Counted from the first letter of the stretch, positions 9,595 to 58,198 are shown. The stretch: 64,000 nucleotides of DNA from Auanema rhodensis (GCA_964057225.1 OZ059898.1:7192001-7256000), one strand, 5' to 3'. A program made the numbers and translations. Notes: generated from the letters alone by a model not told the origin.

Positions 9595-10148
<554 letters not shown>

Positions 10149-11538: not shown

Positions 11539-11820
11539 GTATACTTATTGTATTTATGTTGTGTTACAGAATGCATTTTCTAAATTGATTAATTTAAATT
11601 CGACAATACATGAAGGACAAATTTATAAAATGAGTAAAAAACATGTCAGTGCAACAAAAGTCGTAAACATACATGCACAACGAATAGAAAAAAAACAAAA
11701 AAATCCGATAAAAATATTGAAACCTTAAAACACCGATGATACTAATACATAAATATTATGATACAATTGACTAAATCAGTAAGCTGCAAGGAGACCCATT
11801 TCATTCTAAACATTATTACA

Positions 11821-24004: not shown

Positions 24005-24642
24005 ATTAGGTAACACCTACCCAAAACCTCAAAAAAAATTAGTAATTTAAGGTTTAAGCAAATAAGAAAATATTTATGAAAATTTACAACGAAATAATAA
24101 TGATCAGAGGAACGTTTAAAAATATTCATTCTATCGTTTAGCAAAATCCAGAAACAAAATTTATGACGGAAAAATCGATAAGTATTTTCTACTATATCGA
24201 AAACAATTTCAAAGTAGAAAAACAAATGAAAATTCAAATTTAAAAACTTCGTTGCTTTATGTTAATCATAATTACATTATATAGTTTAATGAATTTAATC
24301 TAAAAATGTATAAAGAATATGAATATTTATAATATATATTTAATAAATTACAGAGCGATAATTTAATGAAAAACATATTTTTTTTACAGAAAAATTAAAG
24401 AGTTGCTCATGTACAAACAGCAGATGATTCTCAAACAAGAATCGCGCTCTTAGATGTGCAGGCCGATGGGTACGGTGCTCTTGGTATTGTGCCAGTTACT
24501 AGCTAGTCATAATTATTTTTCTTTCTTTGTGTTTATAGTTAAAAATTGAATGAATGTGTTCATTTTGTTTTGAGAACGGGTTTGAACTTATTTACTTGTT
24601 CAGGTGATTAATTACCTAAAAAAAGAGACAGGTTAAAAAAAA

Positions 24643-26764
24643 ATGTCTTGTGAGGCTAATCGGCAAAGTGCATGGGGGAAAATTAACAAAGAAGAGGTAT
24701 GCATTTAAAATGAAATTAAAGAGTTAGAAATTTCTTCAGCAAATCGAACCTGTAGTATCTCTTGTTGATATAATGAGTGAAGAACTTGCACAGACTCTTG
24801 TTGATGAGGATGAACGTAAAGAGACCGATTTTGTGGCAAAACTGTTGAATGAAGAATCAAATCAGGTTCGAAATTATGACTCTAATAAATTATCTTTTGA
24901 AAATATGCTACTCAGTCTTTGTTGACGGATGAAGATATTGCAAGAGCATTACAACGTGATTTTGATCGAGAATATGACTTGGAAGTTCGTTTAGAACGGC
25001 AGAAACAAATGGGAAATAATACTGGTTTAACTTTATTTAGATAATGGGCATATAGTTTTGTTACTTTTAGTCACTGTAACTCCAGATCGTTACAAACCTC
25101 GTACAATGCAGGATTCAGATGATGAAGAGTCCGATGATGATGATGCTACACGTGAGGCTGCCACTGCTTTGCTTTATGCTAAGGTACGTGACAAATATCA
25201 GATTTACATGTTTTTGTTATTAAGTTAGACAATGAACTTCCATCAGGAGCATGTCGCAATGAACATGGTTCCTGGACTACTAAACATGACGCTACAATTT
25301 CTGGAAGACGAAATGCAGATAAAGCTTTGAATGTGAGTATATTCTTAATAACAATTATTTTGTTTTCCATAGGACGCTGTTAATGTGCCGGTTGGTGATG
25401 TTGTTTCGCAAGAAATAAGTAACCGTGTTTTCAACGACCTGAGAAGTTTCGCTAAAGCTGACAATAAACGACAACATAAATTAAAAGACAAAGTTTTTTT
25501 CGATTTATAAATTGCATTATACTCTGATCCTAAGGAAGAGCAAGCTACGATGGAAACCTCTGTAGATGCTGCTACGAGATTGTCTTTGTTTAAATGGATT
25601 AATCAAGGTTTATTTGATAGAGTGGAAGGTATTGTTGCTACAGGAAAAGTATAAATAAGATAACTATCATTATATTGTGCTGTATGACTTAGGAGTCTGC
25701 TGTGTTACATGCCGTGCTTGGTCCAAATAATGAACAGCATTTTGCCATTAAAGTTTATAAGACCAGTCTAACTGAGTTTAAAAATAGGTTTTTTTTTCAA
25801 AATTTGTAGATAAAAAAATTGTCTTTACTTAGGGGTGAATATGTCAAGGACGACTTCCGCTTTAAAAATCCTAGAAGTGTTTTGAAAATATGGGCCGAAC
25901 GAGAATATATAAATCTCAAACGGTTTTTAATATATTTGTATATATATTTCTTATTGGAGTGATTTAGAATGATAAATCATAATTTACCTTGTCCACAACC
26001 AGTCAAATTAAAAAAACATCTTCTGATAATGTCTATGATAGGTGCTAATGTAAGTTGCTCTATTTATAACATTCTAAGTTATCTTTAGGGTTGTGCTGCT
26101 CCCCGCCTGCGAAATGTTGATTTTAACTTCTTTACAGAAGAGGAAAGGTTTGATATATATCATCAAGTTCAGGAGGTGAACTCTTAAATGTTGAAAAAGT
26201 CGAACTATGAGATTTAGATCATGTGTAAATTATACAAAGAATGTCAGCTTGTTCATGGGGATTTAAGTGAATTCAATTTACTATTTTCCGAAGGAAAGGT
26301 AAGTTTATTGGAGTTCAATGAAAATAATTGTTTCCTATTGAGATATTCGTTATTGATGTTTCTCAATCAATGGATGTATCACATCCTCGAAATTTACATT
26401 ATTTGACGAGGTAATTTATTGGTTAATATATTATTGGTTAATATATTATTTTGTAATATATTTAAGAGATATTCGAAATGTATTAGCTTTCTTTCAATCG
26501 TTGGGCACTCCAAACCTTCCAACTGATGCTGGGTTGTTTAATTTGATCACTGATTTAAATATGAAGGATGATGATAATTTACTTGTTCAAGTTAGTTTTA
26601 TATCCATTTCAATATATCATATCTTGTAGGTTGAACAATTCTCACGTGAAAATCGTTGTGTTACTCGGCGGAATGATAAATCTCATCCGGCAGATATGGA
26701 ATTACGGTTGTATAATGCAGAAAAAAAAGAAAGGGGAACGTCTCCAGCGAGAGATTACAATTGA
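24643..26764 (+). CDS. riok-3: RIO kinase 3
   Basis: RIOK3-type N-terminus SAWGK..SLVDIMSEELA; ATGKESAVLHA, AIKVYKT, VHGDLSEFNLL, IDVSQS. Confidence 0.92.
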
Positions 26765-27132
26765 CAATTTTTCAAAATGATGTACGTATAAATTATTAGT
26801 GAGTCAGCTTCCTAATTTTTACTTGTTAACTGTTTCAATATGAATGAAGACGTGTTTTTTTTAGTTTAATCTATTCAAACTCACCAATTTAACTAAACGT
26901 AAGTATCATGTTCCTTTAAAATTTATCTTTCAAGAATATATTTCTTTTGATTTTAACAACAAATTGAATATGATATTCATAACGTTATGATTATCATGGT
27001 ATGGGCAGTCCACATGCAAGACAATCTGTCACTGATAGTAGTCGTATCCATAGCAACTGTCGCCCATGAAATTCTAGCCGTTTCCTATTTTGCTCAGCAA
27101 TATTTATAAATATTATAATTTTACTAACTTAA

Positions 27133-30100
27133 ATGGACTCTGAAGATACGGATCCGGTAATTTTTATAATATATTCAACCTTATTTTTAATTAAAAAATA
27201 GACTTCTCATGTACAATTGCCCAAAATTGAAAAACCACCCAGACCGAAATCAACAGATTCTGTTTTATTTCAAAGTTCTTACGATTACACAACACAAGAC
27301 AGGTAAGCTTTTCGTCTTTTTAAAATGTATTTTCTAGAGTTACCTCTGACGATGTTTCTTTTTTCTTATTTTTATAGAGGGAATCCAAGAAATGTAAGGC
27401 AACAGATGATTAGACCAAGAGATCAACTCAATTGGCTTACTGATCAGATAACTTTTGAAACTGAGAGTAGATCTATGTATCGTGCTGATAGCACAAAAAG
27501 ATTAGAAGATCAGTTCAAGTCTAGTACCGATGATTCAAACCCCAATTACTCATTAGGACCACGTTCTAACTACAACTCATGGAAAGGAGAAAGATTTCAA
27601 ATGAACAAGCCTAAGGATCAGATTGATCGATCCTCAGACCCTTTAGATGGAACAACTATCAATAGTTCTACATATCAAGGAAGAGCTGGAGAACGATATG
27701 AGATGAATAGACCGAAAGACCAATGGGAACGATCATCTGGCCCTATGGAAGGGACCACTATTAACCGTTCTACTTTTCAAGGTGGAATAGGAGAGCGATT
27801 TCAAATGAATAAACCGAAAGATCAGATTGATCGCTCGTCAGACCCTTTAGATGGAACAACTATCAATAGTTCCACGTATCAGGGAGGAGCCGGTGAGCGA
27901 TATGAGATGAATAGACCAAAGGACCAATGGGAACGAACATCTGGCCCAATGGAAGAGACCACTATTAACCGTTCTACTTTTCAAGGTGGAATAGGACAGC
28001 GATTTCAAATGAATAAACCGAAAGATCAGATTGATCGCTCGTCAGACCCTTTAGATGGAACAACTATCAATAGTTCTACATATCAAGGAGGAGCCGGTGA
28101 GCGATATGAGATGAATAGACCAAAGGACCAATGGGAACGAACATCTGGCCCAATGGAAGAGACCACTATTAACCGTTCTACTTTTCAAGGTGGAATAGGA
28201 GAGCGATTTCAAATGAATAAACCGAAAGATCAGATTGATCGATCCTCAGACCCTTTAGATGGAACAACTATCAATAGTTTTACATATCAAGGAGGAGCCG
28301 GTGAGCGATATGAGATGAATAGACCAAAGGACCAATGGGAACGATCATCTGGCCCAATGGAAGAGACTACTATTAACCGTTCTACTTTTCAAGGTGGAAT
28401 AGGACAGCGATTTCAAATGAATAAACCGAAAGATCAGATTGATCGCTCGTCAGACCCTTTAGATGGAACAACTATCAATAGTTCTACATATCAAGGAGGA
28501 GCCGGTGAACGATATGAGATGAATAGACCGAAAGACCAATGGGAACGGTCATCTGGCCCTATGGAAGGGACCACTATTAACCGTTCTACTTTTCAAGGTG
28601 GAATAGGACAGCGATTTCAAATGAATAAACCGAAAGATCAGATTGATCGATCCTCAGATCCTCTAGATGGAACAACTATCAATAGTTCTACATTTCAAGG
28701 AGGAGCCGGTGAACGATATGAGATGAATAGACCGAAAGACCAATGGGAACGGTCATCTGGCCCTATGGAAGGGACCACTATCAATAGTTCTACATATCAG
28801 GGAGGTGTTGGTGAACGGTACCAAGCGAACAAGCCTAAGGATCAGATTGATCGATCCTCAGACCCTTTAGATGGAACAACTATCAATAGTTCTACATTTC
28901 AAGGAGGAGCCGGTGAACGATATGAGATGAATAGACCGAAAGACCAATGGGAACGGTCATCTGGCCCTATGGAAGGGACCACTATTAACCGTTCTACTTT
29001 TCAAGGTGGAATAGGACAGCGATTTCAAATGAATAAACCGAAAGATCAGATTGATCGATCCTCAGACCCTCTAGATGGAACAACTATCAATAGTTCTACA
29101 TTTCAAGGAGGAGCCGGTGAACGATATGAGATGAATAGACCGAAAGACCAATGGGAACGGTCATCTGGCCCTATGGAAGGGACCACTATTAACCGTTCTA
29201 CTTTTCAAGGTGGAATAGGACAGCGATTTCAAATGAATAAACCGAAAGATCAGATTGATCGATCCTCAGATCCTCTAGATGGAACAACTATCAATAGTTC
29301 TACATATCAGGGAGGTGTTGGTGAACGGTACCAAGCGAACAAGCCTAAGGATCAGATTGATCGATCCTCAGACCCTTTAGATGGAACAACTATCAATAGT
29401 TCTACATTTCAAGGAGGAGCCGGTGAACGATATGAGATGAATAGACCGAAAGACCAATGGGAACGGTCATCTGGCCCTATGGAAGGGACCACTATTAACC
29501 GTTCTACTTTTCAAGGTGGAATAGGACAGCGATTTCAAATGAATAAACCGAAAGATCAGATTGATCGATCCTCAGATCCTCTAGATGGAACAACTATCAA
29601 TAGTTCTACATATCAGGGAGGTGTTGGTGAACGGTACCAAGCGAACAAGCCTAAGGATCAGATTGATCGATCCTCAGACCCTTTAGATGGAACAACTATC
29701 AATAGTTCCACGTATCAGGGAGGTGTTGGTGAACGGTACCAAGCGAACAAGCCTAAGGATCAGATTGATCGATCCTCAGACCCTTTAGATGGAACAACTA
29801 TCAATAGTTCTACATTTCAAGGAGGAGCCGGTGAACGATATGAGATGAATAGACCGAAAGACCAATGGGAACGGTCATCTGGCCCTATGGAAGGGACCAC
29901 TATTAACCGTTCTACTTTTCAAGGTGGAATAGGACAGCGATTTCAAATGAATAAACCGAAAGATCAGATTGATCGCTCGTCAGACCCTTTAGATGGAACA
30001 ACAATGAATCGATCAACTTATCAAGGAGGTGTTGGTGAACGGTACCAAGCGAATAAGCCTAAGGATCAGATTGATCGATCCTCAGACCCTTTAGATGGAA

Positions 30101-33100
30101 CAACTATCAATAGTTCCACGTATCAGGGAGGTGTTGGTGAACGGTACCAAGCGAACAAGCCTAAGGATCAGATTGATCGATCCTCAGACCCTTTAGATGG
30201 AACAACTATCAATAGTTCTACATTTCAAGGAGGAGCCGGTGAACGATATGAGATGAATAGACCGAAAGACCAATGGGAACGGTCATCTGGCCCTATGGAA
30301 GGGACCACTATTAACCGTTCTACTTTTCAAGGTGGAATAGGACAGCGATTTCAAATGAATAAACCGAAAGATCAGATTGATCGCTCGTCAGACCCTTTAG
30401 ATGGAACAACAATGAATCGATCAACTTATCAAGGAGGTGTTGGTGAACGGTACCAAGCGAATAAGCCTAAGGATCAGATTGATCGATCCTCAGACCCTTT
30501 AGATGGAACAACTATCAATAGTTCCACGTATCAGGGAGGTGTTGGTGAACGGTACCAAGCGAACAAGCCTAAGGATCAGATTGATCGATCCTCAGACCCT
30601 TTAGATGGAACAACTATCAATAGTTCTACATTTCAAGGAGGAGCCGGAGAACGATATGAGATGAATAGACCGAAAGACCAATGGGAACGGTCATCGGGCC
30701 CTATGGAAGGGACCACTATTAACCGTTCTACTTTTCAAGGTGGAATAGGACAGCGATTTCAAATGAATAAACCGAAAGATCAGATTGATCGATCCTCAGA
30801 CCCTCTAGATGGAACAACAATGAATCGATCAACTTATCAAGGAGGTGTTGGTGAACGGTACCAAGCGAACAAGCCTAAGGATCAGATTGATCGATCCTCA
30901 GACCCTTTAGATGGAACAACTATCAATAGTTCTACATTTCAAGGAGGAGCCGGTCAACGATATGAGATGATTAGACCGAAAGACCAATGGGAACGGTCAT
31001 CTGGTCCAATGGAAGGGACCACTATTAACCGTTCTACTTTTCAAGGTGGAATAGGACAGCGATTTCAAATGAATAAACCGAAAGATCAGATTGATCGATC
31101 CTTAGACCCTTTAGATGGAACAACTATCAATAGTTCCACGTATCAGGGAGGTGTTGGTGAACGGTACCAAGCGAACAAGCCTAAGGATCAGATTGATCGA
31201 TCCTCAGACCCTTTAGATGGAACAACTATCAATAGTTCCACGTATCAGGGAGGTGTTGGTGAACGGTACCAAGCGAACAAGCCTAAGGATCAGATTGATC
31301 GATCCTCAGACCCTTTAGATGGAACAACTATCAATAGTTCTACATATCAGGGAGGTGTTGGTGAACGGTACCAAGCGAACAAGCCTAAGGATCAGATTGA
31401 TCGATCCTCAGACCCTTTAGATGGAACAACTATCAATAGTTCTACATTTCAAGGAGGAGCCGGAGAACGATATGAGATGAATAGACCGAAAGACCAATGG
31501 GAACGATCATCTGGTCCAATGGAAGGGACCACTATTAACCGTTCTACTTTTCAAGGTGGAATAGGACAGCGATTTCAAATGAATAAACCGAAAGATCAGA
31601 TTGATCGATCCTCAGACCCTCTAGATGGAACAACTATCAATAGTTCCACGTATCAGGGAGGTGTTGGTGAACGGTACCAAGCGAACAAGCCTAAGGATCA
31701 GATTGATCGATCCTCAGACCCTTTAGATGGAACAACTATCAATAGTTCCACGTATCAGGGAGGTGTTGGTGAACGGTACCAAGCGAACAAGCCTAAGGAT
31801 CAGATTGATCGATCCTCAGACCCTTTAGATGGAACAACTATCAATAGTTCCACGTATCAGGGAGGTGTTGGTGAACGGTACCAAGCGAACAAGCCTAAGG
31901 ATCAGATTGGTCGATCCTCAGACCCTTTAGATGGAACAACTATCAATAGTTCTACATTTCAAGGAGGAGCCGGTGAACGATATGAGATGAATAGACCGAA
32001 AGACCAATGGGAACGGTCATCTGGCCCTATGGAAGGGACCACTATTAACCGTTCTACTTTTCAAGGTGGCATAGGTCAGCGATTTCAAATGAATAAACCG
32101 AAAGATCAGATTGATCGATCCTCAGACCCTTTAGATGGAACAACTATCAATAGTTCTACATTTCAAGGAGGAGCCGGTGAACGATATGAGATGAATAGAC
32201 CGAAAGACCAATGGGAACGGTCATCTGGCCCTATGGAAGGGACCACTATCAATAGTTCCACGTATCAGGGAGGTGTTGGTGAAAGGTACCAAGCGAATAA
32301 GCCTAAGGATCAGATTGATCTGTCCTCTGACCCTCTAGATGGAACAACAATGAATCGATCGACTTATCAGGGAGGTGTTGGAGAACGGTACCAAGCGAAC
32401 AAGCCTAAGGATCAGATTGATCGCTCGTCAGAACCTCTAGATGGAACCACCATCAATAGTTCTACGTATCAGGGAGGTGTTGGTGAAAGATATCAAGCGA
32501 ACAAGCCTAAGGATCAAATTAATCGTCCTTCTGATCCTCTAGATGGAACAACAATGAATCGATCGACTTATCAGGGAGGTGTTGGTGAACGGTACCAAGT
32601 GAACAAGCCTAAGGATCAGATTGATCGTCCTTCTGATCCTCTAGATGGAACCACCATCAATAGTTCTACATTTCAAGGAGGAGCCGGTGAACGATATGAG
32701 ATGAATAGACCAAAGGACCAATGGGAACGATCACCTGGCCCTATGGAAGGGACCACTATCAATAGTTCCACGTATCAGGGGGGTGTTGGAGAAAGGTACG
32801 AAGCGAATAAGCCTAAGGATCAGATTGATCGCTCGTCAGAACCTCTAGATGGAACAACAATGAATCGATCAACTTATCAAGGAGGTGTTGGAGAAAGGTA
32901 CCAAGCGAACAAGCCTAAGGACCAGATTGATCGCTCGTCAGACCCTCTAGATGGAACAACAATGAACCGATCAACTTATCAAGGAGGTGTTGGAGAAAGG
33001 TACCAAGCGAACAAGCCTAAGGACCAGATTGATCGCTCGTCAGATCCTCTAGATGGAACCACCATCAATAGTTCCACGTATCAGGGAGGTGTTGGTGAGA

Positions 33101-36100
33101 GGTACCAAGTGAACAAGCCTAAGGATCAAATTGATCGATCCTCAGACCCTCTAGATGGAACAACAATGAACCGATCAACTTATCAAGGAGGTGTTGGAGA
33201 AAGGTACCAAGCGAACAAGCCTAAGGACCAGATTGATCGCTCGTCAGACCCTCTAGATGGAACAACAATGAATCGATCAACTTATCAAGGAGGTGTTGGA
33301 GAAAGGTACCAAGCGAACAAGCCTAAGGACCAGATTGATCGCTCGTCAGATCCTCTAGATGGAACCACCATCAATAGTTCTACGTATCAGGGGGGTGTTG
33401 GTGAAAGATATCAAGCGAACAAGCCTAAGGATCAAATTAATCGTCCTTCTGATCCTCTAGATGGAACAACAATGAATCGATCGACTTATCAGGGAGGTGT
33501 TGGTGAACGGTACCAAGTGAACAAGCCTAAGGATCAGATTGATCGCTCGTCAGACCCTCTAGATGGAACAACAATGAATCGATCAACTTATCAAGGAGGT
33601 GTTGGAGAAAGGTACCAAGCGAACAAGCCTAAGGACCAGATTGATCGCTCGTCAGACCCTCTAGATGGAACAACAATGAACCGATCAACTTATCAAGGAG
33701 GTGTTGGAGAAAGGTACCAAGCGAACAAGCCTAAGGACCAGATTGATCGCTCGTCAGATCCTCTAGATGGAACCACCATCAATAGTTCCACGTATCAGGG
33801 AGGTGTTGGTGAGAGGTACCAAGTGAACAAGCCTAAGGATCAAATTGATCGATCCTCAGACCCTCTAGATGGAACAACAATGAACCGATCAACTTATCAA
33901 GGAGGTGTTGGAGAAAGGTACCAAACGAACAAGCCTAAGGACCAGATTGATCGCTCGTCAGATCCTCTAGATGGAACCACCATCAATAGTTCCACGTATC
34001 AGGGAGGTGTTGGTGAGAGGTACCAAGTGAACAAGCCTAAGGATCAAATTGATCGTCCTTCTGATCCTCTAGATGGAACCACCATCAATAGTTCCACGTA
34101 TCAGGGAGGTGTTGGTGAGAGGTACCAAGTGAACAAGCCTAAGGATCAAATTGATCGATCCTCAGACCCTCTAGATGGAACAACAATGAATCGATCGACT
34201 TATCAGGGAGGTGTTGGTGAACGGTACCAAGTGAACAAGCCTAAGGATCAAATTAATCGTCCTTCTGATCCTCTAGATGGAACAACAATGAACCGATCAA
34301 CTTATCAGGGAGGTGTTGGAGAAAGGTACCAAGCGAACAAGCCTAAGGACCAGATCGATCGCTCGTCAGATCCTCTAGATGGAACAACAATGAACCGATC
34401 AACTTATCAAGGAGGTGTTGGAGAAAGGTACCAAGCGAACAAGCCTAAGGACCAGATTGATCGCTCGTCAGATCCTCTAGATGGAACCACCATCAATAGT
34501 TCCACGTATCAGGGAGGTGTTGGTGAGAAGTACCAAGTGAACAAGCCTAAGGATCAAATTGATCGATCCTCAGACCCTCTAGATGGAACAACAATGAACC
34601 GATCAACTTATCAGGGAGGTGTTGGAGAAAGGTACCAAGCGAACAAGCCTAAGGACCAGATTGATCGCTCGTCAGATCCTCTAGATGGAACCACCATCAA
34701 TAGTTCCACGTATCAGGGAGGTGTTGGTGAGAGGTACCAAGTGAACAAGCCTAAGGATCAAATTGATCGTCCTTCTGATCCTCTAGATGGAACCACCATC
34801 AATAGTTCCACGTATCAGGGAGGTGTTGGTGAGAGGTACCAAGTGAACAAGCCTAAGGATCAAATTGATCGATCCTCAGACCCTCTAGATGGAACAACAA
34901 TGAATCGATCGACTTATCAGGGAGGTGTTGGTGAACGGTACCAAGTGAACAAGCCTAAGGATCAAATTAATCGTCCTTCTGATCCTCTAGATGGAACAAC
35001 AATGAACCGATCAACTTATCAGGGAGGTGTTGGAGAAAGGTACCAAGCGAACAAGCCTAAGGACCAGATCGATCGCTCGTCAGATCCTCTAGATGGAACA
35101 ACAATGAATCGATCGACTTATCAAGGAGGTGTTGGAGAAAGGTACCAAGCGAACAAGCCTAAGGACCAGATTGATCGATCCTCAGACCCTCTAGATGGAA
35201 CAACAATGAACCGATCAACTTATCAAGGAGGTGTTGGAGAAAGGTACCAAGCGAACAAGCCTAAGGACCAGATTGATCGCTCGTCAGATCCTCTAGATGG
35301 AACCACCATCAATAGTTCCACGTATCAGGGAGGTGTTGGTGAGAGGTACCAAGTGAACAAGCCTAAGGATCAAATTGATCGATCCTCAGACCCTCTAGAT
35401 GGAACAACAATGAACCGATCAACTTATCAGGGAGGTGTTGGAGAAAGGTACCAAGTGAACAAGCCTAAGGATCAGATTGATCGTCCTTCTGATCCTCTAG
35501 ATGGAACCACCATCAATAGTTCCACGTATCAGGGGGGTGTTGGAGAAAGGTACGAAGCGAATAAGCCTAAGGATCAGATTGATCGCTCGTCAGACCCTCT
35601 AGATGGAACAACAATGAATCGATCGACTTATCAGGGAGGTGTTGGTGAACGGTACCAAGTGAACAAGCCTAAGGATCAAATTAATCGTCCTTCTGATCCT
35701 CTAGATGGAACCACCATCAATAGTTCCACGTATCAGGGAGGTGTTGGTGAAAGGTACCAAGCGAACAAGCCTAAGGACCAGATTGATCGCTCGTCAGATC
35801 CTCTAGATGGAACCACCATCAATAGTTCCACGTATCAGGGAGGTGTTGGTGAACGGTACCAAGCGAACAAGCCTAAGGACCAGATTGATCGCTCGTCAGA
35901 TCCTCTAGATGGAACCACCATCAATAGTTCCACGTATCAGGGAGGTGTTGGAGAAAGGTACCAAGCGAACAAGCCTAAGGACCAGATCGATCGCTCGTCA
36001 GATCCTCTAGATGGAACAACAATGAACCGATCAACTTATCAAGGAGGTGTTGGAGAAAGGTACCAAGCGAACAAGCCTAAGGACCAGATTGATCGATCCT

Positions 36101-39100
36101 CAGACCCTCTAGATGGAACAACAATGAACCGATCAACTTATCAAGGAGGTGTTGGAGAAAGGTACCAAGCGAACAAGCCTAAGGACCAGATTGATCGCTC
36201 GTCAGATCCTCTAGATGGAACCACCATCAATAGTTCCACGTATCAGGGAGGTGTTGGTGAAAGGTACCAAGTGAACAAGCCTAAGGATCAGATTGATCGT
36301 CCTTCTGATCCTCTAGATGGAACCACCATCAATAGTTCCACGTATCAGGGAGGTGTTGGTGAACGGTACCAAGCGAACAAGCCTAAGGATCAGATTGATC
36401 GATCCTTAGACCCTCTAGATGGAACAACAATGAATCGATCAACTTATCAAGGAGGTGTTGGAGAAAGGTACCAAGCGAACAAGCCTATAGACCAGATTGA
36501 TCGCTCGTCAGACCCTCTAGATGGAACAACAATGAACCGATCAACTTATCAAGGAGGTGTTGGAGAAAGGTACCAAGCGAACAAGCCTAAGGACCAGATT
36601 GATCGCTCGTCAGATCCTCTAGATGGAACCACCATCAATAGTTCCACGTATCAGGGAGGTGTTGGTGAGAGGTACCAAGTGAACAAGCCTAAGGATCAGA
36701 TTGATCGTCCTTCTGATCCTCTAGATGGAACAACAATGAATCGATCGACTTATCAAGGAGGTGTTGGAGAAAGGTACCAAGCGAACAAGCCTAAGGACCA
36801 GATTGATCGCTCGTCAGATCCTCTAGATGGAACCACCATCAATAGTTCCACGTATCAGGGAGGTGTTGGTGAGAGGTACCAAGTGAACAAGCCTAAGGAT
36901 CAGATTGATCGTCCTTCTGATCCGTTAGATGGAACAACAATGAATCGATCGACTTATCAAGGAGGTGTTGGAGAAAGGTACCAAGCGAACAAGCCTAAGG
37001 ACCAGATTGATCGCTCGTCAGATCCTCTAGATGGAACCACCATCAATAGTTCCACGTATCAGGGAGGTGTTGGTGAGAGGTACCAAGTGAACAAGCCTAA
37101 GGATCAGATTGATCGTCCTTCTGATCCTCTAGATGGAACAACAATGAATCGATCGACTTATCAAGGAGGTGTTGGAGAAAGGTACCAAGCGAACAAGCCT
37201 AAGGACCAGATTGATCGTCCTTCTGATCCTTTAGATGGAACAACAATGAATCGATCGACTTATCAAGGAGGTGTTGGAGAAAGGTACCAAGCGAACAAGC
37301 CTAAGGATCAGATTGATCGTCCTTCTGATCCTCTAGATGGAACAACAATGAATCGATCGACTTATCAAGGAGGTGTTGGTGAAAGGTATCAAGCGAACAA
37401 GCCTAAGGACCAGATTGATCGCTCGTCAGACCCTCTAGATGGAACAACAATGAATCGATCGACTTATCAAGGAGGTGTTGGAGAAAGGTACCAAGCGAAC
37501 AAGCCTAAGGATCAGATTGATCGATCCTTAGACCCTCTAGATGGAACAACAATGAATCGATCAACTTATCAAGGAGGTGTTGGAGAAAGGTACCAAGCGA
37601 ACAAGCCTAAGGACCAGATTGATCGCTCGTCAGACCCTCTAGATGGAACAACAATGAATCGATCGACTTATCAGGGAGGTGTTGGAGAAAGGTACCAAGC
37701 GAACAAGCCTAAGGACCAGATTGATCGCTCGTCAGATCCTCTAGATGGAACCACCATCAATAGTTCCACGTATCAGGGAGGTGTTGGTGAGAGGTACCAA
37801 GTGAACAAGCCTAAGGATCAAATTGATCGATCCTCAGACCCTCTAGATGGAACCACCATCAATAGTTCCACGTATCAGGGAGGTGTTGGTGAACGGTATC
37901 AAGCGAATAAGCCTAAGGATCAAATTGATCGATCCTCAGACCCTCTAGATGGAACAACAATGAATCGATCGACTTATCAGGGAGGTGTTGGAGAAAGGTA
38001 CCAAGCGAACAAGCCTAAGGATCAGATTGATCGATCCTTAGACCCTCTAGATGGAACAACAATGAATCGATCAACTTATCAAGGAGGTGTTGGAGAAAGG
38101 TACCAAGCGAACAAGCCTAAGGACCAGATTGATCGCTCGTCAGACCCTCTAGATGGAACAACAATGAATCGATCGACTTATCAGGGAGGTGTTGGAGAAA
38201 GGTACCAAGCGAACAAGCCTAAGGACCAGATTGATCGCTCGTCAGATCCTCTAGATGGAACCACCATCAATAGTTCCACGTATCAGGGAGGTGTTGGTGA
38301 GAGGTACCAAGTGAACAAGCCTAAGGATCAAATTGATCGATCCTCAGACCCTCTAGATGGAACCACCATCAATAGTTCCACGTATCAGGGAGGTGTTGGT
38401 GAACGGTATCAAGCGAATAAGCCTAAGGATCAAATTGATCGATCCTCAGACCCTCTAGATGGAACAACAATGAATCGATCGACTTATCAGGGAGGTGTTG
38501 GAGAAAGGTACCAATTGAAGAAGCCTAAGGATCAGATTAATCGGCCGTTAGAACCTCTAGATGGAACAACAATGAATCGATCAACTTATCAAGGAGGTGT
38601 TGGAGAAAGGTACCAATTGAACAAGCCTAAGGATCAAATTGATCGTCCTTCTGATCCTCTAGATGGAACCACCATCAATAGTTCCACGTATCAGGGAGGT
38701 GTTGGTGAACGGTATCAAGCGAATAAGCCTAAGGATCAAATTGATCGATCCTCAGACCCTCTAGATGGAACAACAATGAATCGATCGACTTATCAGGGAG
38801 GTGTTGGAGAAAGGTACCAAGCGAACAAGCCTAAGGACCAGATCGATCGCTCGTCAGATCCTCTAGATGGAACAACAATGAATCGATCGACTTATCAAGG
38901 AGGTGTTGGAGAAAGGTACCAATTGAAGAAGCCTAAGGATCAGATTAATCGGCCGTTAGAACCTCTAGATGGAACCACCATCAATAGTTCCACGTATCAG
39001 GGAGGTGTTGGTGAGAGGTACCAAGTGAACAAGCCTAAGGATCAAATTGATCGATCCTCAGACCCTCTAGATGGAACAACGATGAATCGATCAACTTATC

Positions 39101-41226
39101 AAGGAGGTGTTGGAGAAAGGTACCAAGTAAACAAGCCTAAGGATCAGATTGATCGATCCTCAGATCCTCTAGATGGAACCACCATCAATAGTTCCACGTA
39201 TCAGGGAGGTGTTGGAGAAAGGTATCAAGCGAATAAGCCTAAGGATCAAATTGATCGATCCTCAGACCCTCTAGATGGAACCACCATCAATAGTTCCACG
39301 TATCAGGGAGGTGTTGGAGAAAGGTATCAAGCGAATAAGCCTAAGGATCAAATTGATCGATCCTCAGACCCTCTAGATGGAACCACCATCAATAGTTCCA
39401 CGTATCAGGGAGGTGTTGGAGAAAGGTATCAAGCGAATAAGCCTAAGGATCAAATTGATCGATCCTCAGACCCTCTAGATGGAACAACGATGAATCGATC
39501 AACTTATCAAGGAGGTGTTGGAGAAAGGTACCAAGTAAACAAGCCTAAGGATCAGATTGATCGATCCTCAGATCCTCTAGATGGAACCACCATCAATAGT
39601 TCCACGTATCAGGGAGGTGTTGGTGAGAGGTACCAAGTGAACAAGCCTAAGGATCAGATTGATCGATCCTCAGATCCTCTAGATGGAACCACCATCAATA
39701 GTTCCACGTATCAGGGAGGTGTTGGTGAAAGGTACCAATTGAACAAGCCTAAGGATCAGATTGATCGTCCTTCTGATCCTCTCGAAGGAACAACAATGAA
39801 TCGATCAACTTATCAAGGAGGTGTTGGAGAAAGGTACCAAGTGAACAAGCCTAAGGATCAAATTGATCGATCCTCAGACCCTCTAGATGGAACAACGATG
39901 AATCGATCGACTTATCAAGGAGGTGTTGGAGAAAGGTACCAAGTGAACAAGCCTAAGGATCAGATTGATCGTCCTTCTGATCCTCTCGAAGGAACAACAA
40001 TGAATCGATCAACTTATCAAGGAGGTGTTGGAGAAAGGTACCAAGTGAACAAGCCTAAGGATCAAATTGATCGATCCTCAGACCCTCTAGATGGAACAAC
40101 GATGAATCGATCGACTTATCAAGGAGGTGTTGGAGAAAGGTACCAAGTGAACAAGCCTAAGGATCAGATTGATCGTCCTTCTGATCCTCTCGAAGGAACA
40201 ACAATGAATCGGTCAACTTATCAAGGAGGTGTTGGAGAAAGGTACCAAGTGAACAAGCCTAAGGATCAGATTGATCGTCCTTCTGATCCTCTCGAAGGAA
40301 CAACAATGAATCGATCGACTTATCAAGGAGGTGTTGGAGAAAGGTACCAAGTGAACAAGCCTAAGGATCAGATTGATCGTCCTTCTGATCCTCTCGAAGG
40401 AACAACAATGAATCGGTCAACTTATCAAGGAGGTGTTGGAGAAAGGTACCAATTGAACAAGCCTAAGGATCAGATTGATCGTCCCTCTGATCCTCTAGAT
40501 GGAACAACGATGAATCGATCGACTTATCAAGGAGGTGTTGGAGAAAGGTACCAATTGAACAAGCCTAAGGATCAGATTGATCGTCCTTCTGATCCTCTAG
40601 ATGGAACAACAATGAATCGATCGACTTATCAAGGAGGTGTTGGAGAAAGGTACCAATTGAACAAGCCTAAGGATCAGATTGATCGTCCCTCTGATCCTCT
40701 AGATGGAACAACGATGAATCGATCGACTTATCAAGGAGGTGTTGGAGAAAGGTATCAAGTGAACAAGCCTAAGGATCAGATTGATCGTCCTTCTGATCCT
40801 CTAGATGGAACAACGATGAGTCGATCAACTTATCAAGGAGGTGTTGGTGAACGGTACCAAGTGAACAAGCGTAAGGATCAGATCGATCGTCCTTCTGATC
40901 CTCTAGAAGGAACCACAATGAATCGATCAACTTACCAAGGAGGTGTTGGAGAAAGGTATCAAGCGAAGAAGCCTAAGGATCAGATTGGTCGGCGGTCAGA
41001 CCCTCTAGATGGAACAACTATGAATCGATCGACTTATCAAGGAGGTGTTGGTGAACGATTTCCCACAATCAAACCAAAAGATCATATATCCGCTTTTGCT
41101 AGAATAAGTGAAGATAATGATATGATACCTTTGAAATATCGCCCTGCTAGAAATGTTCCGACAATACGAATAATATCGGCCGTTAAGAATAAAAGACATA
41201 TGGTTCAGACCTCAACTTTGTTTTGA
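27133..41226 (+). CDS. Giant (~4657 aa) 34-aa tandem-repeat protein, SAXO/STOP Mn-motif-like
   Basis: Exons 27133-27156, 27202-27302 and 27378-41226 splice in phase with canonical sites; the 13.8 kb last exon is open throughout; AATAAA near 41371. Confidence 0.85.
27586..41085 (+). repeat. Coding tandem array of 102-nt units, 132 full copies plus a partial copy
   Basis: First GER codon at 27586 and last at 41050; the difference 13464 equals 132 x 102. Consensus GERYQANKPKDQIDRSSDPLDGTT(I/M)N(S/R)STYQGGV. Confidence 0.97.
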
Positions 41227-41947
41227 TTGTTCGTATCATTTTTTTGAGGAAGTTTCTATTTTTATGTTTGAATTATTTAGGCTTGTTCATTATGTGTATC
41301 ATTTTTAGTGAAGCGGTTCTTTAGCGACATATCTTTCATAAATGTTTGTATAATTTGTTTCATCAATTAAAATAAATCATTCTTCAGCATGATGTGTTAA
41401 TTACGTTCAAATTTGTAATATATGCATTTCAAACTTTCAAAATGCTTCCAATTAGTTATCTTTTGGAGTCTCAAATCGATTTCTATTTTAACTACTACAG
41501 TACGACCTCCTTTTCAAGGTCTTTTCTGTCGGTTGTCGTGTTTAGCTCTCCCATTATTCCGCAAATCGATCAAGGTATATTTCTAGGTTTATTTGGTCGA
41601 TATTGGATATTTGAACGTATTTTCATACTACGAAACAATTACAGAAAAAAAATATACTTTTTAACTCTTTGTCTTTTCATTTAATTGGCGAAAAACATTA
41701 TGTTCATGTCCTACAGTCTCTCGTGTCCAAAACTTGCCTACAGTGAGATTCCTTTTCTCATTCAATCAATATTTTTTTATCCTTTTTATCTACATTATAT
41801 GATATATATCAATATATTCGTAATATTTCACCTAAATTTTTCATTTTAGTAGATATAATATACATTTATTTATATTTATAGAAACATGCCTTTACATACA
41901 TATTTCATAAATTTTTATCTTTTAATATAATAAATATTTCGATGTTT

Positions 41948-41949
<2 letters not shown>

Positions 41950-41980
<31 letters not shown>
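41950..41980. repeat. (TA)n microsatellite
   Basis: Visible TA run; a similar run lies at ~42897-42921. Confidence 0.85.
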
Positions 41981-43180: not shown

Positions 43181-46100
43181 ATGATTCTACCTATCTACAA
43201 ATCTCGACGTAAAACAAAAAAATTTCTATTTTATTCTCTATTCGTGCTAGGATTTTTATTACTGTGGTGTATTCTAACTATTATTATTCTCTTTCTACAA
43301 GATGCAGTAAGTTTGGCTAATACTATACAATCATTTTATAGTTTGAATAAGTCATACATTCAATTTGTAGCCATATTATTGAAAATTTTAAAAATATATA
43401 TTTATGACTATTAAATATAAATTTATCTTCAGGTTTTTGGTTCTTCTACATCGCCACCATTGCGAATTGGACCGAAACAGGAAGAGACCTTCAACGGTCG
43501 AGGTGTTCAAGTAGTAGTTGGACATTACAATGGCAATCTTCCAATGGAAAAACTGCGAAACATCTCTGAAGGTCTCTTTTTCATACCAAAAACCATTTTT
43601 TCTTGAGAAATGAAAAGAAAAACTTTTCAATTTGAGTATTTTAAAAAATGTTTTTTAAAATACCAAAATAGATATGTATATGAAGAATCCTAGGAAACAA
43701 GTACAGATATTATAAATATTTTATTATTATAGAAGACCTAAATGCAAATAATTATAATCCTATTAATGGCTGGGGTGAAGGTGGCAGCCCAGTTCATTTA
43801 TCGAAAGAAGAAGAAATTCTCGCTCAAGACATTTTCCCAATAAATCAGGTTTGTGACTATTTAGATCAATTTCATAGTTAAATTCGTGGTTATCCCCCAT
43901 TTGATATTACATTTTTTGAAATAAAATAAAAAATATTTTAAAATTTTAAAAATAATTTTTCAGTTTATGTTCTAAATTATGGTTTACTTTAAAAATTTAT
44001 AATTTCAATTTATTCTTAGTTTGAGAGACAAATCATATATTCTAATGAATTCTTTTTTATTTCATCTCTTTTTACGTGTTCATTTCTCGTTCATCTCTTC
44101 AAGATCCAATAACTTGAATCTAAATCCCAAAAAAATGAACAAAATAAGGCTTTGGTTGACTAGTTTTAGAATACTTCTCTCAATCTCTTCTCAAGTTGTT
44201 CTCTATATTTCTTATGATCTTCAACGATATTTTGTTCATATAAAAAGATATTTCATAAATTTATGATATAACCTAGTAAAACACATTCATATGAACTAAT
44301 TAAAAACGATTAAAGCTTTTGGTTTTTCCTATGAAAACGAAAGTATATTTTTCAGTTTAATCTCTATATCAGTGATAGGATATCAGTTCACAGATCTATT
44401 CCTGATATCAGAAAACCATCTTGTCGTGAAAAATCATATCCAGGTAGAGAGATAATTAAAGTTTTATATAAAGAGTTTATAACATATGTAACAGATCCTT
44501 CTGAACTTCCAAATACATCTGTTATCATAGTGTATCATAATGAAGCTTATTCAACATTACTTCGAACTGTTTGGAGCATCATTGATCGATCACCGCACGA
44601 GTCTATTCGTGAAATAATTCTCGTAGATGATTTTTCTAATAGAAGTAAAACATCAAATTTAAATAAAACAAAAACAAAAATTTTATTTTCAGCCTTTTTG
44701 CGTAAAGATCTTGACAATGCAGTTCGAATGATGCCGGTTCCTGTAAAAATAGTTCGAGCTGTTGAACGCGTCGGCTTGATTCGAGCGCGTATGATGGGGG
44801 CTCAAGTAGGCTTTGACAACAATGAGATTGAAATAATAGAATAATTTTTAAGGAAGCACGTGGTGATGTACTGACATTTTTGGATTCACACTGTGAATGC
44901 ACGATAGGTTGGCTAGAGCCAATGCTGACAAGAATTAAAGAAAACAGGTATCGTATACAATACACTTGTATAATTATTTATTTAATCTATGTTTTTTAAA
45001 GAAAAAATGTCGTTTGCCCTATTATTGACGTGATTAACGATCATACATTCCAATATCAAAAAGGGATAGAGCTTTTCAGAGGAGGTTTCAATTGGAATAT
45101 GCAATTCCGGTAATTGCTATCAGATGTACATAAACATACTTACATTTCTTTAGATGGTATTCTATGCCTTCAGCAATGGCTAAAGATCGTCTGAAAGATC
45201 CGACATCACCGATTACGTATGAAAAAGCCATTTTACCAAACTTTTATTAAATTTTCAAATTTAGATCACCAACAATGGCTGGAGGACTATTCAGTATTGA
45301 TCGAAAATATTTTGAAGAACTTGGCGCTTATGATCCAGGGATGGATATATGGGGCGGAGAGAATTTGGAAATATCATTCAGAGTGAGTTTTATTACTTTA
45401 AATAATAATTAGTTATACATATATCTCATGTACTTATACAACATATTCTTTTCCAATCCCTTCTATAATTAGTTTTTATTTTTCTCATGAAATATGAATC
45501 AAGAAAATTCATTTGAATATTAACAGTTTTGAGCAAATTATACGAATTGCAATTTAAAAACAATTTTATACGATTTGTTATATAAAACATAAATTCCATT
45601 TAGTAAGTTGTAATACTTGCTGAACGGTTATGTCTATGTATTATAACCAATTGAAACTACTGAATATGGGTTGTTTTCTTAAACTTCTATGATCGCTGAT
45701 CTTATAATCATTTTCCTCACGTGATACTTAACCGGTCTTCAAATTCTACAACTTTCCATGTCATTTTCAAACAATTTTTCTGTTTTAAATCATTTCTGAC
45801 TGGTTTGTTCTCATACTACTTTATAGTATATGTTATATAAACCTTACATACTCTATGCAAACTAAATATTGAATTAAATTTTTTTTTGTGTGTTTGACTT
45901 GTTTGGAAACAAAACTAACAATATGATTTATTTCTATTTTATAGATATGGCAGTGTGGTGGTCGTGTTGAAATTCTTCCATGCTCACATGTTGGTCACAT
46001 CTTCCGTAAAACATCTCCTCATGACTTTCCTGGTAAAAGTAGTGGCAAAGTACTTAACGGAAACTTATTAAGGTAATACAAAATCCAGTTATAATCGAAT

Positions 46101-58133: not shown

Positions 58134-58165
<32 letters not shown>

Positions 58166-58166
58166 A

Positions 58167-58198
<32 letters not shown>

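What the first reader, a model, noticed from the sequence alone, without database searches (positions are those of the whole stretch)
27133..41226. Giant 132 x 34-aa repeat protein: candidate micron-scale microtubule-lumen stabiliser or ruler
Seen in sequence: a ~4657-aa protein with no signal peptide or TM segment, about 96% composed of 34-aa units, encoded by one 13.8 kb exon in a genome of tiny exons. There is no net indel across the array, and many differences are synonymous (cga tcc tca vs cgc tcg tca; acc acc atc vs aca act atc), indicating selection on the protein. Established: SAXO/FAM154, MAP6/STOP and apicomplexan SPM1 carry Mn motifs (roughly P-[FM]-[ED]-G-x-T-T-x-x-x-x-[YF]) spaced ~32-34 aa, each binding one tubulin dimer (8 nm), usually in about a dozen copies or fewer. 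PLDGTTMNRSTY and PMEGTTINRSTF fit this pattern. Inference: a greatly expanded Mn-motif protein that could span ~1 micron of protofilament, notable in an animal without motile cilia.
Basis: partly seen in the sequence, partly recalled or inferred. Interest (0 to 1): 0.9.

Follow-up and report, generated by a model that had tools for sequence, protein, structure and literature searches.

The report
Giant SAXO-like microtubule protein, nematode
A nematode gene encodes a 516-kDa protein made of 132 near-identical copies of the short motif that SAXO proteins use to line the inside of microtubules, and its promoter carries the switch typical of sensory-cilium genes, so it is probably a micron-long internal brace of sensory cilia.

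Summary
One open frame (27325-41226, +) holds 132 in-register 34-aa units with no indel. The units differ mainly at synonymous sites (pN/pS 0.15), so the protein is under selection.

The Mn-motif/SAXO reading passes its sequence test. Pfam SAXO1-2 scores above its cut-off. The only solved-structure match is bovine sperm SAXO1. A library search found 109 relatives, many with the SAXO N-terminal cysteine motif.

The gene lacks that cysteine motif, the C-terminal CP motif and the basic charge of classic SAXOs, so it is an aberrant family member.

New points:
- The genome is a nematode's (SL1 leader arrays).
- The only X-box (DAF-19/RFX site) in the 64-kb window lies 76-89 bp upstream of the inferred start codon. 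The BBS5 and IFT57 genes of the same genome carry X-boxes at like positions. This points to expression in ciliated sensory neurons.
- Giant SAXO-like proteins also exist in sea spiders (5512 aa), spiders and molluscs, so the size is rare but not unique.
- In Ancylostoma and Toxocara each unit is its own exon, whereas here the array has no introns.

Microtubule binding, luminal location and transcription of the full gene remain untested. RNA evidence is ambiguous.

The parts
27044..27057 (+). X-box (DAF-19/RFX site) GTATCCATAGCAAC, 76-89 bp upstream of the inferred ATG
   Evidence: It is the only match to GTHNYYATRRNAAC in the 64-kb window, both strands. Genome density is 832 matches per 181 Mb. 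BBS5 and IFT57 of the same genome carry perfect X-boxes at -71..-58 and -194..-181. The consensus and the preferred -50..-200 region come from 10.1101/2020.08.21.260547 and PMC1794439.
27133..27156 (+). Inferred exon 1 (ATG; MDSEDTDP)
   Evidence: Read from the sequence: an ATG followed by a GTAATT donor. The phase fits. No RNA support.
27202..27302 (+). Inferred exon 2 (101 nt)
   Evidence: Follows the acceptor ...AAAAATAG and precedes the donor GTAAGC. The frame joins exon 3. No RNA support.
27378..41226 (+). Exon 3: a single 13,849-nt coding exon including the stop codon
   Evidence: The ORF is open from 27307 to 41226. The acceptor TTTTTATAG ends at 27377.
27378..27600 (+). Degenerate N-terminal Mn-like units (for example QITFETESRSMY, with T at position 6 and Y at position 12)
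   Evidence: Single copy in the genome and 32-34% like two array units. It aligns to A. caninum units.
27601..41064 (+). Array of 132 units of 102 nt / 34 aa. Consensus ANKPKDQIDRSSDPLDGTT[IM]N[RS]STYQGGVGERYQ, with the Mn motif at P14-Y25.
   Evidence: Repeat structure and selection. PF05217 scores 69.8 bits on 33109-34638.
27601..29232 (+). The first 16 units alternate two subtypes (PLDGTTINSSTY and PMEGTTINRSTF), giving a 68-aa super-repeat.
   Evidence: In units 1-20, nucleotide identity is 0.69 at lag 1 but 0.90 at lag 2.
41065..41223 (+). Unique C-terminal tail of 53 aa (TIKPKDHISAFARISEDND...TSTLF)
   Evidence: Translation. It has no cysteine or CP motif and no detectable counterpart in the A. 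caninum or T. canis loci.
41371..41376 (+). AATAAA, a candidate poly(A) signal about 145 nt after the stop codon
   Evidence: Read from the sequence only.

Best explanation
This is a nematode member of the SAXO/MAP6 (Mn-repeat) family of microtubule inner proteins, expanded to about 135 motifs. The array has 132 uniform 34-aa units, and 2-3 degenerate units precede it.

The proposed mechanism is inferred by homology to SAXO1, SPM1 and FAP363; it is not shown here. The protein is disordered on its own. Inside a microtubule it would lie along one protofilament. [quoted passage not shown] The remaining residues of the unit, about 22 in all, including the conserved KPKDQ and GG.GER, would span the rest of the 8-nm dimer repeat. 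One molecule would then staple about 135 consecutive dimers, roughly 1.1 micrometres. The strict 34-aa unit length would keep it in register with the lattice.

A consensus X-box sits at -89..-76, so the gene is most likely switched on by DAF-19/RFX in ciliated sensory neurons. The microtubules it braces would then be those of the non-motile sensory axonemes.

Shown: the repeat anatomy, purifying selection, family-level sequence homology, nematode origin, the X-box and its controls, and kin in other nematodes. Inferred: tubulin binding, luminal location, 8 nm per unit, and ciliary expression.
For: Anatomy and selection:
- 132 in-register units, pN/pS 0.145, no indel although pS is 0.55.

Family:
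- PF05217 scores 29.4 and 69.8 bits against a cut-off of 26.5. The second hit has 4 stretches significant on their own, each running collinearly over about 175 profile positions.
- A phmmer search of 1.84 billion representatives gave 109 hits. Many have the CxCxxCxCGRHxCPH motif and a 33-35-aa periodicity.
- The best hit, P0001, is itself PF05217-positive through its N-terminus, at 80.7 bits. It aligns unit for unit with the array.

Motif definition:
- T/S at position 6 and F/Y at position 12 hold in 132 of 132 units (against PMC3280300 and PMC8144581).
- A 34-aa period equals a 15-aa motif plus an 18-20-aa inter-repeat. It is close to the 32 residues that fill 8 nm in SPM1.

Other:
- Disordered alone, pLDDT 40, as reported for SAXO6.
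- No signal peptide or transmembrane segment.
- Nematode origin: the exact SL1 22-mer occurs 1267 times in 252-bp tandem arrays.
- X-box and controls.
- Kin in Ancylostoma (63% identity), Cooperia, Mesorhabditis, Toxocara (PF05217 30.1 bits), Steinernema, Meloidogyne and Aphelenchoides.
- SAXO2 also lines non-axonemal singlet microtubules with varied protofilament numbers, so nematode lattice geometries need not be an obstacle.
Against: - There is no direct evidence of tubulin binding. No complex prediction could be run, because no unaltered full-length tubulin sequence was available.
- RNA evidence is weak. Two runs that are truly RNA gave contigs only on repeat units (depth 2.6-8) and none on the unique exons 27133-27561. 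Carry-over of genomic DNA from a 132-copy repeat could produce the same picture.
- The start codon and the first two exons are inferred from sequence alone.
- Three SAXO hallmarks are absent: the N-terminal Cys motif, the C-terminal CP motif and a basic pI (here 5.5, with zero Cys). Proline is 6.6% against 11-20% in SAXOs.
- HMMER scores on repeats are inflated by summing. Unrelated families also 'pass' that way (BssB_TutG, DUF7485, ELM2), though with no stretch that is significant on its own.
- An X-box match alone has a known high false-positive rate (PMC1794439). The consensus shows no overall excess in this genome.
Confidence: 0.6

Rival explanations
1. It is a real Mn-repeat microtubule protein, but it acts on non-ciliary microtubules. 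Candidates are long stable neuronal microtubules such as the wide touch-receptor type, or epidermal or muscle attachment arrays. It could sit inside or outside the tubule. On this reading the X-box match is fortuitous.
For: MAP6 is a neuronal, non-ciliary Mn protein, and SAXO2 lines manchette-like cytoplasmic microtubules. X-box scans have many false positives. The consensus is not enriched genome-wide.
Against: The X-box is a perfect consensus match in the preferred -50..-200 region, the only one in 64 kb, with a chance of about 1e-3 for a 250-bp promoter. Two ciliary control genes of the same genome show the same layout. The very low RNA level in whole-animal samples fits a gene expressed in few cells.
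Confidence: 0.17
2. The protein is a secreted or extracellular repeat protein that starts at ATG 27325. The T-rich stretch MYFLELPLTMFLFSYFY would act as a weak signal peptide, and the N-x-S sequon in every unit would be glycosylated. The resemblance to SAXO would then be convergent or compositional.
For: The mechanical ORF starts at 27325 with a hydrophobic stretch. N21-x-S23 is present in 131 of 132 units. Repeat summing inflates HMM scores.
Against: - 27303-27377 looks like a standard 75-nt intron (GTAAGC...TTTTTATAG), and the hydrophobic stretch is what a T-rich intron translates to.
- The sequon is not kept in the Ancylostoma (TINRES) or Toxocara (TVSREA, TVNRET) units.
- The homology rests on long collinear alignments and on relatives that carry the independent SAXO N-terminal motif.
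- There are no cysteines.
Confidence: 0.04
3. The locus is an assembly-inflated or decaying array. The true gene would have far fewer units, or it would no longer be expressed.
For: No read spanning the array was examined. RNA contigs cover only repeat units. In short-read assemblies of other nematodes the homologous arrays end in N gaps.
Against: - A 13.9-kb frame stays open in an AT-rich genome, with pN/pS 0.145 and 89 distinct DNA units.
- Assembly artefacts give identical copies and decay gives stops.
- The longest exact internal repeat is 593 bp.
- Repeat word depth is about 74-81 times the flank depth in two independent DNA data sets.
Confidence: 0.07

Closest known systems
SAXO1/SAXO2 (FAM154A/B; Pfam PF05217), mammalian and protozoan 'stabilizers of axonemal microtubules'
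   Same: The Mn-like motif has T/S at position 6 and F/Y at position 12. A conserved KP-containing inter-repeat follows, and the period is 33-35 aa. The alignment is collinear over 330 residues (E 2e-6 to bovine SAXO1 in PDB 8OU0). Both are disordered, filamentous proteins.
   Different: This protein has about 135 motifs against about 12, and 516 kDa against about 50 kDa. It has no N-terminal CxCxxCxCG.H.C motif and no C-terminal CP motif. Its pI is acidic (5.5) rather than about 9. Its units are near-identical rather than divergent, and every unit is exactly 34 aa.
Toxoplasma SPM1 (subpellicular microtubule protein 1)
   Same: Tandem, uniform Mn repeats (32 aa against 34 aa here). By structure, SPM1 runs along one protofilament with an 8-nm period and uses all residues of each repeat. 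It acts on non-motile, very stable microtubules.
   Different: SPM1 has 6 repeats and conserved N- and C-terminal domains. It works with TrxL1/2. No direct sequence match to it was found in the PDB searches.
Uncharacterised giant SAXO-like proteins: Pycnogonum litorale CAM1331508.1 (5512 aa), Nymphon striatum KAG1663059.1 (2266 aa, named 'Stabilizer of axonemal microtubules 2'), Parasteatoda XP_042903936.1 (2599 aa), Patella and Haliotis (1.6-2.2 k aa)
   Same: They are the best library hits (1296 bits for P0001). They show huge Mn-repeat expansion and a shared KP[KR]D[EQ][IL]D ... TTN[KR]..[FY] unit pattern.
   Different: The two looked at here, Pycnogonum and Parasteatoda, keep the SAXO cysteine motif. 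Their unit is a 67-69-aa or roughly 100-aa double or triple repeat. They come from animals with flagellate sperm. None was met in the papers searched here (no targeted search was made).
MAP6/STOP and MAP6d1
   Same: Mn modules that stabilise microtubules against cold and nocodazole. MAP6 can be luminal, and MAP6d1 acts in cilia.
   Different: They have 3-4 Mn modules plus Mc and calmodulin-binding modules and palmitoylated N-terminal cysteines. They are vertebrate proteins.
C. elegans xbx genes (DAF-19/RFX X-box targets such as the bbs and IFT genes)
   Same: A 14-bp X-box matching GTHNYYATRRNAAC within 50-200 bp of the ATG.
   Different: No SAXO-like gene was met among nematode X-box targets in the papers read here. 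DAF-19 dependence is untested.

Membership tests
SAXO (PF05217 SAXO1-2) | Profile HMM score above Pfam's gathering cut-off (26.5 bits) | tested here: met
   29.4 bits on residues 1-492 of the ORF. 69.8 bits (E 3e-19, 4 stretches significant on their own) on 15 middle units.
SAXO (PF05217 SAXO1-2) | Repeated Mn-like motif with T/S at position 6 and F/Y at position 12 (Dacheux 2012, PMC3280300; Wang 2021, PMC8144581) | tested here: met
   In P14-L-D-G-T-T19-x-N-x-S-T-[YF]25, T19 is T in 132/132 units and position 25 is Y in 106 and F in 26. It aligns column for column with PMEGLTTSRRDF of SAXO1.
SAXO (PF05217 SAXO1-2) | A motif of about 15 aa followed by an inter-repeat of 18-20 aa, in linear repetition | tested here: met
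   The period is exactly 34 aa, repeated 132 times.
SAXO (PF05217 SAXO1-2) | N-terminal cysteine motif 1 ([GR][KT]CVC[ESR][LI]CTCGK[HC][KR]C) | tested here: not met
   The 4657-aa product has zero cysteines. A Meloidogyne SAXO N-terminus and a degenerate DNA pattern for CxxCxCGRHxC found nothing in the genome. An intron-split copy cannot be excluded.
SAXO (PF05217 SAXO1-2) | Last Mn-like domain carries a Cys-Pro motif | tested here: not met
   There is no Cys in the C-terminal tail. The Ancylostoma locus does have KPCP after its assembly gap.
SAXO (PF05217 SAXO1-2) | Basic pI (8.2-9.1) and high proline (11-20%) | tested here: not met
   pI 5.5, consensus unit net charge 0, proline 6.6%.
SAXO (PF05217 SAXO1-2) | Binds and stabilises microtubules against cold and nocodazole; short helix at the luminal alpha/beta intradimer interface | not testable with these tools
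   No unaltered full-length tubulin was available for complex prediction, because all tubulin genes are split into tiny exons. The monomer model is disordered, pLDDT 40.
DAF-19/RFX X-box target (nematode ciliary gene battery) | X-box GTHNYYATRRNAAC in the preferred region, 50-200 bp upstream of the ATG | tested here: met
   GTATCCATAGCAAC at 27044-27057, which is -89..-76. It is the only match in the window. Genome density is 4.6e-6 per bp. Controls BBS5 (-71..-58) and IFT57 (-194..-181) are positive.
DAF-19/RFX X-box target (nematode ciliary gene battery) | X-box conserved in orthologous promoters | tested here: inconclusive
   The A. caninum locus has GTATCCATGGAAAC 2.8 kb upstream of its first unit (4 of 100 shuffles reach one match), but the gene's 5' end there is unknown. 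None was found in the T. canis locus.
DAF-19/RFX X-box target (nematode ciliary gene battery) | Expression in ciliated sensory neurons, dependent on DAF-19 | not testable with these tools
   Only whole-sample RNA contig sets were available, and the unique exons were not covered.
MAP6/STOP | Mn modules together with a palmitoylated N-terminal cysteine cluster, Mc modules and calmodulin-binding modules | tested here: not met
   Mn-like motifs are present, but there are no cysteines. Mc and calmodulin modules were not separately searched.

The most novel reading that the evidence does not exclude
A single 4657-aa polypeptide threads about 1.1 micrometres of one protofilament inside the sensory-cilium microtubules of a nematode. 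It would act as more than a brace: as a molecular ruler or compartment-setter, with the copy number of its exactly 34-aa units fixing the length of a stable axonemal segment. The alternating two-subtype head (units 1-16) would give a 16-nm register or a polarity mark. Independent expansions in sea spiders and nematodes would then mark a general way to build micron-scale luminal rulers.
Probability: 0.1. Interest if true: 0.85.

Novelty: new variant of a known kind. Interest (0 to 1): 0.62.

Why it matters
Microtubule inner proteins of the Mn/SAXO type are known from motile cilia, sperm and apicomplexan cortical microtubules. Those proteins carry about 4-12 motifs. What fills the lumen of nematode sensory-cilium microtubules is essentially unknown.

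A 132-unit, strictly periodic Mn protein under an X-box would be a candidate major luminal component of non-motile cilia. It could stabilise 135 tubulin dimers per molecule.

It also raises a mechanical question: how does a 0.5-MDa disordered chain enter a microtubule? Co-assembly at the growing tip seems required.

The uniform repeats suit reconstitution and cryo-EM, because every site is the same. Giant SAXO-like proteins also turned up in chelicerates and molluscs, so extreme Mn expansion is a recurrent and so far undescribed theme.

The intron-less 13.8-kb exon in a genome of tiny exons, set against one exon per unit in other nematodes, is a neat case for studying repeat expansion and intron loss.

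Tried and rejected
1. The search for homologous proteins was blank twice, for the whole protein and for a 474-aa piece. The word prefilter is swamped by the repeat. The exhaustive phmmer search then found 109 relatives, so the blanks mean nothing.

2. Other Pfam hits (DUF7485 33 bits, BssB_TutG 34-75 bits, ELM2, FAO_M, Prefoldin_3) were rejected as repeat-sum artefacts. Each matches 10-30 residues, and no stretch is significant on its own.

3. A PDB profile search with a 3-unit alignment gave only SAXO1 (E 0.001). There was no direct match to SPM1, FAP363 or SAXO5.

4. AlphaFold2 on three units gave pLDDT 40. This is uninformative beyond 'disordered alone', so no fold search was run.

5. The ESM Atlas gave only weak leads (0.81; SAXO1-2 and SAXO5-like clusters).

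6. Complex prediction with tubulin was not run. Every tubulin gene of this genome is split into exons of 235 aa or fewer, and no route to a full-length alpha/beta pair was open.

7. The search for a SAXO cysteine motif or a second SAXO gene in the genome found nothing. The array swamps protein searches.

8. IFT20 as a third X-box control was not found in six-frame search.

9. The unique N- and C-terminal regions have no detectable counterpart in the Ancylostoma or Toxocara loci.

10. The species was not identified. Ids are coded, and the closest kin are strongylid and Mesorhabditis fragments. The genome is not Meloidogyne, whose proteins are only 37-45% alike.

11. Genome-wide X-box count against a reversed control shows no enrichment (832 against 1478, the control inflated by repeats). 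That test says nothing either way.


Full report
**1. The observation**

Between 26000 and 42500 there is one ORF of 150 aa or more: 27325..41226 on the + strand, 4633 aa. Tandem Repeats Finder reports a 102-bp period with 131.9 copies at 27603-41055. G+C rises from about 30% in the flanks to 43-47% in the array.

Translated in frame, the array is 132 consecutive 34-aa units that never leave register. D6, Q7, P14, T18, T19, T24, Q26, G27 and G30 are invariant in all 132 units.

The first 16 units alternate two subtypes. Later units form higher-order blocks of a few units.

It has GT..AG borders and correct phases. It gives a 4657-aa, 516-kDa protein with pI 5.5, no cysteine and no hydrophobic segment.

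**2. More than chance, and under selection**

Over all pairs of units pS = 0.55 and pN = 0.08, so pN/pS is 0.145. There are 89 distinct DNA units but only 46 distinct protein units. The units are therefore old at silent sites yet held constant as protein. No indel has been tolerated, which suggests the unit length itself is constrained.

The longest exact repeat within the array is 593 bp, so a long-read assembly can resolve it.

Contig sets of DNA runs from two other species labels were laid on the 5' end. The single-copy flank has word depth of about 29 and about 10. Repeat bins reach about 2160 and about 810, which is 74-81 times higher. This is rough but independent support for an array of the order of 100 copies.

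**3. Organism and genome style**

The canonical 22-nt SL1 spliced leader occurs 1267 times in this 181-Mb assembly, in tandem arrays of 252-bp period. The genome is therefore a nematode's. Earlier notes of this scan say the same.

Exons are tiny. The upstream gene (26000-26854) appears in RNA contigs with five GT..AG introns of 39-56 nt removed. Tubulin, IFT57 and BBS5 match only as short exon pieces. A 13.8-kb exon is therefore exceptional here.

**4. Family**

- The first 492 aa score 29.4 bits on Pfam SAXO1-2 (cut-off 26.5). Fifteen middle units score 69.8 bits (E 3e-19), with four stretches that pass on their own and each run collinearly over about 175 profile positions.
- Other Pfam 'hits' (DUF7485, BssB_TutG, ELM2 and others) have no stretch significant on its own. 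They are sums of a tiny match repeated many times.
- Among 177,635 PDB sequences the only match is SAXO1 of entry 8OU0, E 2e-6 over 330 residues. [quoted passage not shown]
- In that alignment PMEGTTINRSTF lies on PMEGLTTSRRDF. The inter-repeat (Y.G..GE....KP) is alike as well.
- An exhaustive phmmer search of 1.84 billion representatives gave 109 hits at E of 1e-3 or better. Many carry the SAXO N-terminal CxCxxCxCGRHxCPH motif and a 33-35-aa periodicity.
- The best hit is P0001, 5512 aa, from Pycnogonum litorale. It is PF05217-positive through its N-terminus, independently of the repeats (80.7 bits). It aligns unit for unit with the array.

The published definition of the Mn-like motif is T/S at position 6 and F/Y at position 12, in a motif of about 15 aa followed by an 18-20-aa inter-repeat (PMC3280300; PMC8144581). 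Every unit here meets it.

**5. Where it departs from SAXO**

There is no cysteine at all, so there is no N-terminal motif 1 and no C-terminal CP motif. The pI is 5.5 rather than about 9, and proline is 6.6% rather than 11-20%.

Searches of the genome for the cysteine motif found nothing. An intron-split copy is not excluded.

PF05217 matches in the genome all fall in this gene. The unique N-terminal region is single copy.

**6. Relatives in nematodes and elsewhere**

Named kin:
- Ancylostoma caninum, 63% identity (a fragment)
- A. duodenale, Cooperia oncophora and Mesorhabditis spiculigera (fragments)
- Toxocara canis, itself PF05217-positive at 30.1 bits
- Steinernema
- Meloidogyne and Aphelenchoides, which keep the cysteine motif

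In the A. caninum locus the repeat period is 199 bp: a 102-bp unit exon plus a 97-bp intron. It runs into a 9.1-kb assembly gap. In T. canis the units are single exons 500-1200 bp apart, also followed by a gap. So the unit-per-exon layout is found in two other clades, and the intron-less array is special to this lineage.

Outside nematodes there are giant SAXO-like proteins:
- sea spiders, 5512 aa and 2266 aa (the latter named 'Stabilizer of axonemal microtubules 2')
- a spider, 2599 aa
- molluscs, 1.6-2.2 k aa

A loose motif count gives about 140 motifs in the Pycnogonum protein.

**7. A new clue to where it acts**

The 278 bp between the end of the upstream gene's RNA contig (26854) and the inferred ATG (27133) contain GTATCCATAGCAAC at 27044-27057. 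This is a perfect match to the DAF-19/RFX X-box consensus GTHNYY AT RRNAAC (consensus). It is the only match in the 64-kb window on either strand.

It lies at -89..-76, inside the preferred -50..-200 region (PMC1794439). Genome-wide there are 832 matches in 181 Mb. The chance of one in a given 250-bp promoter is therefore about 1e-3.

I first saw the site by eye and then tested it with the published consensus.

Two ciliary genes of the same genome served as positive controls:
- BBS5: GTTGCCATAGCAAC at -71..-58
- IFT57: GTTACTATGACAAC at -194..-181

The X-box logic therefore operates in this worm. The gene is most likely expressed in ciliated sensory neurons.

The A. caninum locus has GTATCCATGGAAAC 2.8 kb upstream of its first unit. 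The 5' end of that gene is unknown, so this is only weak support.

**8. Expression**

Two small runs are truly RNA, because they hold spliced contigs of the upstream gene. In this gene their contigs lie only on repeat units (depth 2.6-8) and none lies on the unique exons.

That pattern fits a gene expressed in a few dozen cells. It equally fits trace genomic DNA of a 132-copy repeat. Transcription is therefore not shown.

**9. Mechanism proposed (inferred)**

In solved structures, Mn motifs form a short helix at the luminal alpha/beta intradimer interface. They repeat every 8 nm along a protofilament, and SPM1 needs all 32 residues of its repeat to fill that distance. Mn motifs contact the alpha-tubulin S9-S10 loop. 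SAXO2 also lines non-axonemal singlets of varied protofilament number.

By homology, each 34-aa unit here would occupy one tubulin dimer, with T19-Y25 as the helix. About 135 units would then span about 1.1 micrometres. The chain is disordered alone, like SAXO6.

I put the SAXO-family assignment at about 0.85. The whole statement (luminal brace of sensory-cilium microtubules) I put at about 0.6.

**10. Rivals**

- A non-ciliary microtubule role: 0.17.
- A secreted glycoprotein starting at ATG 27325: 0.04. The N-x-S sequon in every unit is not kept in Ancylostoma or Toxocara units. The hydrophobic 'head' is what a T-rich intron translates to.
- An inflated or dead array: 0.07. This is contradicted by the open frame, pN/pS, unit diversity and depth ratios.

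**11. Novelty**

The family and the motif are known. The new points are:
- the scale and uniformity in a nematode
- the loss of the cysteine and CP motifs and of the basic charge
- the X-box
- the intron-less array

I found no paper in the library describing a nematode SAXO beyond one sentence that an orthologue was seen in a C. elegans extract. I met no description of giant SAXO proteins in the papers retrieved, though I ran no search aimed specifically at them.

Verdict: a new variant of a known kind.

**12. Limits**

Tubulin-complex prediction could not be run, because no unaltered full-length tubulin was available. The species stayed coded.

Noticed in passing
window 26000-26854 (+): The upstream neighbour is an expressed gene. 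RNA contigs of two runs remove five GT..AG introns of 39-56 nt (26050-26088, 26174-26215, 26297-26340, 26409-26464, 26591-26629). Its product was not identified. Its contig ends 278 bp before the giant gene's ATG, and it is not co-covered with the giant gene, so an operon is unlikely.
   Followed up: partly
G000:C3:6741531-6768501 and beyond (L011, L012): There are 1267 exact copies of the canonical SL1 leader GGTTTAATTACCCAAGTTTGAG. The copies listed (C3:6.74-6.77 Mb) stand head to tail with a 252-bp period, an unusually short SL1 gene repeat.
   Followed up: partly
L031 9847-10672 and N gap 10673-19778 (Ancylostoma caninum JOJR01000042.1): The orthologous array in the hookworm repeats exon and intron together (199-bp period, 98% identical copies), then runs into a 9.1-kb gap. 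After the gap comes a tail with KPCP, the SAXO-type Cys-Pro motif that the window's protein lacks.
   Followed up: partly
window 12895-18400 (-): CCR4-NOT subunit 1 (CNOT1) orthologue in many small exons, with Pfam Not1, ARM_Cnot1 and NOT1_connector hits.
   Followed up: partly
window 57903-58343 (+): A 146-aa open frame made almost wholly of Q, H and P (QQHQQ repeats). The opposite strand reads as poly-V/A/D and poly-L frames. It may be a low-complexity coding exon or a simple CAG/CAA-type repeat.
   Followed up: no
window 9722-10036 (+), 44530-44844 (+), 22587-24016 (-): A ubiquitin-family exon (PF00240). A glycosyltransferase family 2 exon that looks like polypeptide GalNAc-transferase. Exons that read like proteasome lid subunit Rpn6/PSMD11 by eye only, since Pfam gave no clear hit.
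   Followed up: partly
P0001 (Pycnogonum litorale CAM1331508.1, 5512 aa), P0002 (Nymphon striatum, 2266 aa): Sea spiders carry even larger SAXO proteins, with a 69-aa double unit and, in the Pycnogonum protein, an intact cysteine motif. This looks like an independent giant expansion.
   Followed up: partly
window 41951-41980: A perfect (TA)15 microsatellite 0.7 kb downstream of the gene.
   Followed up: no
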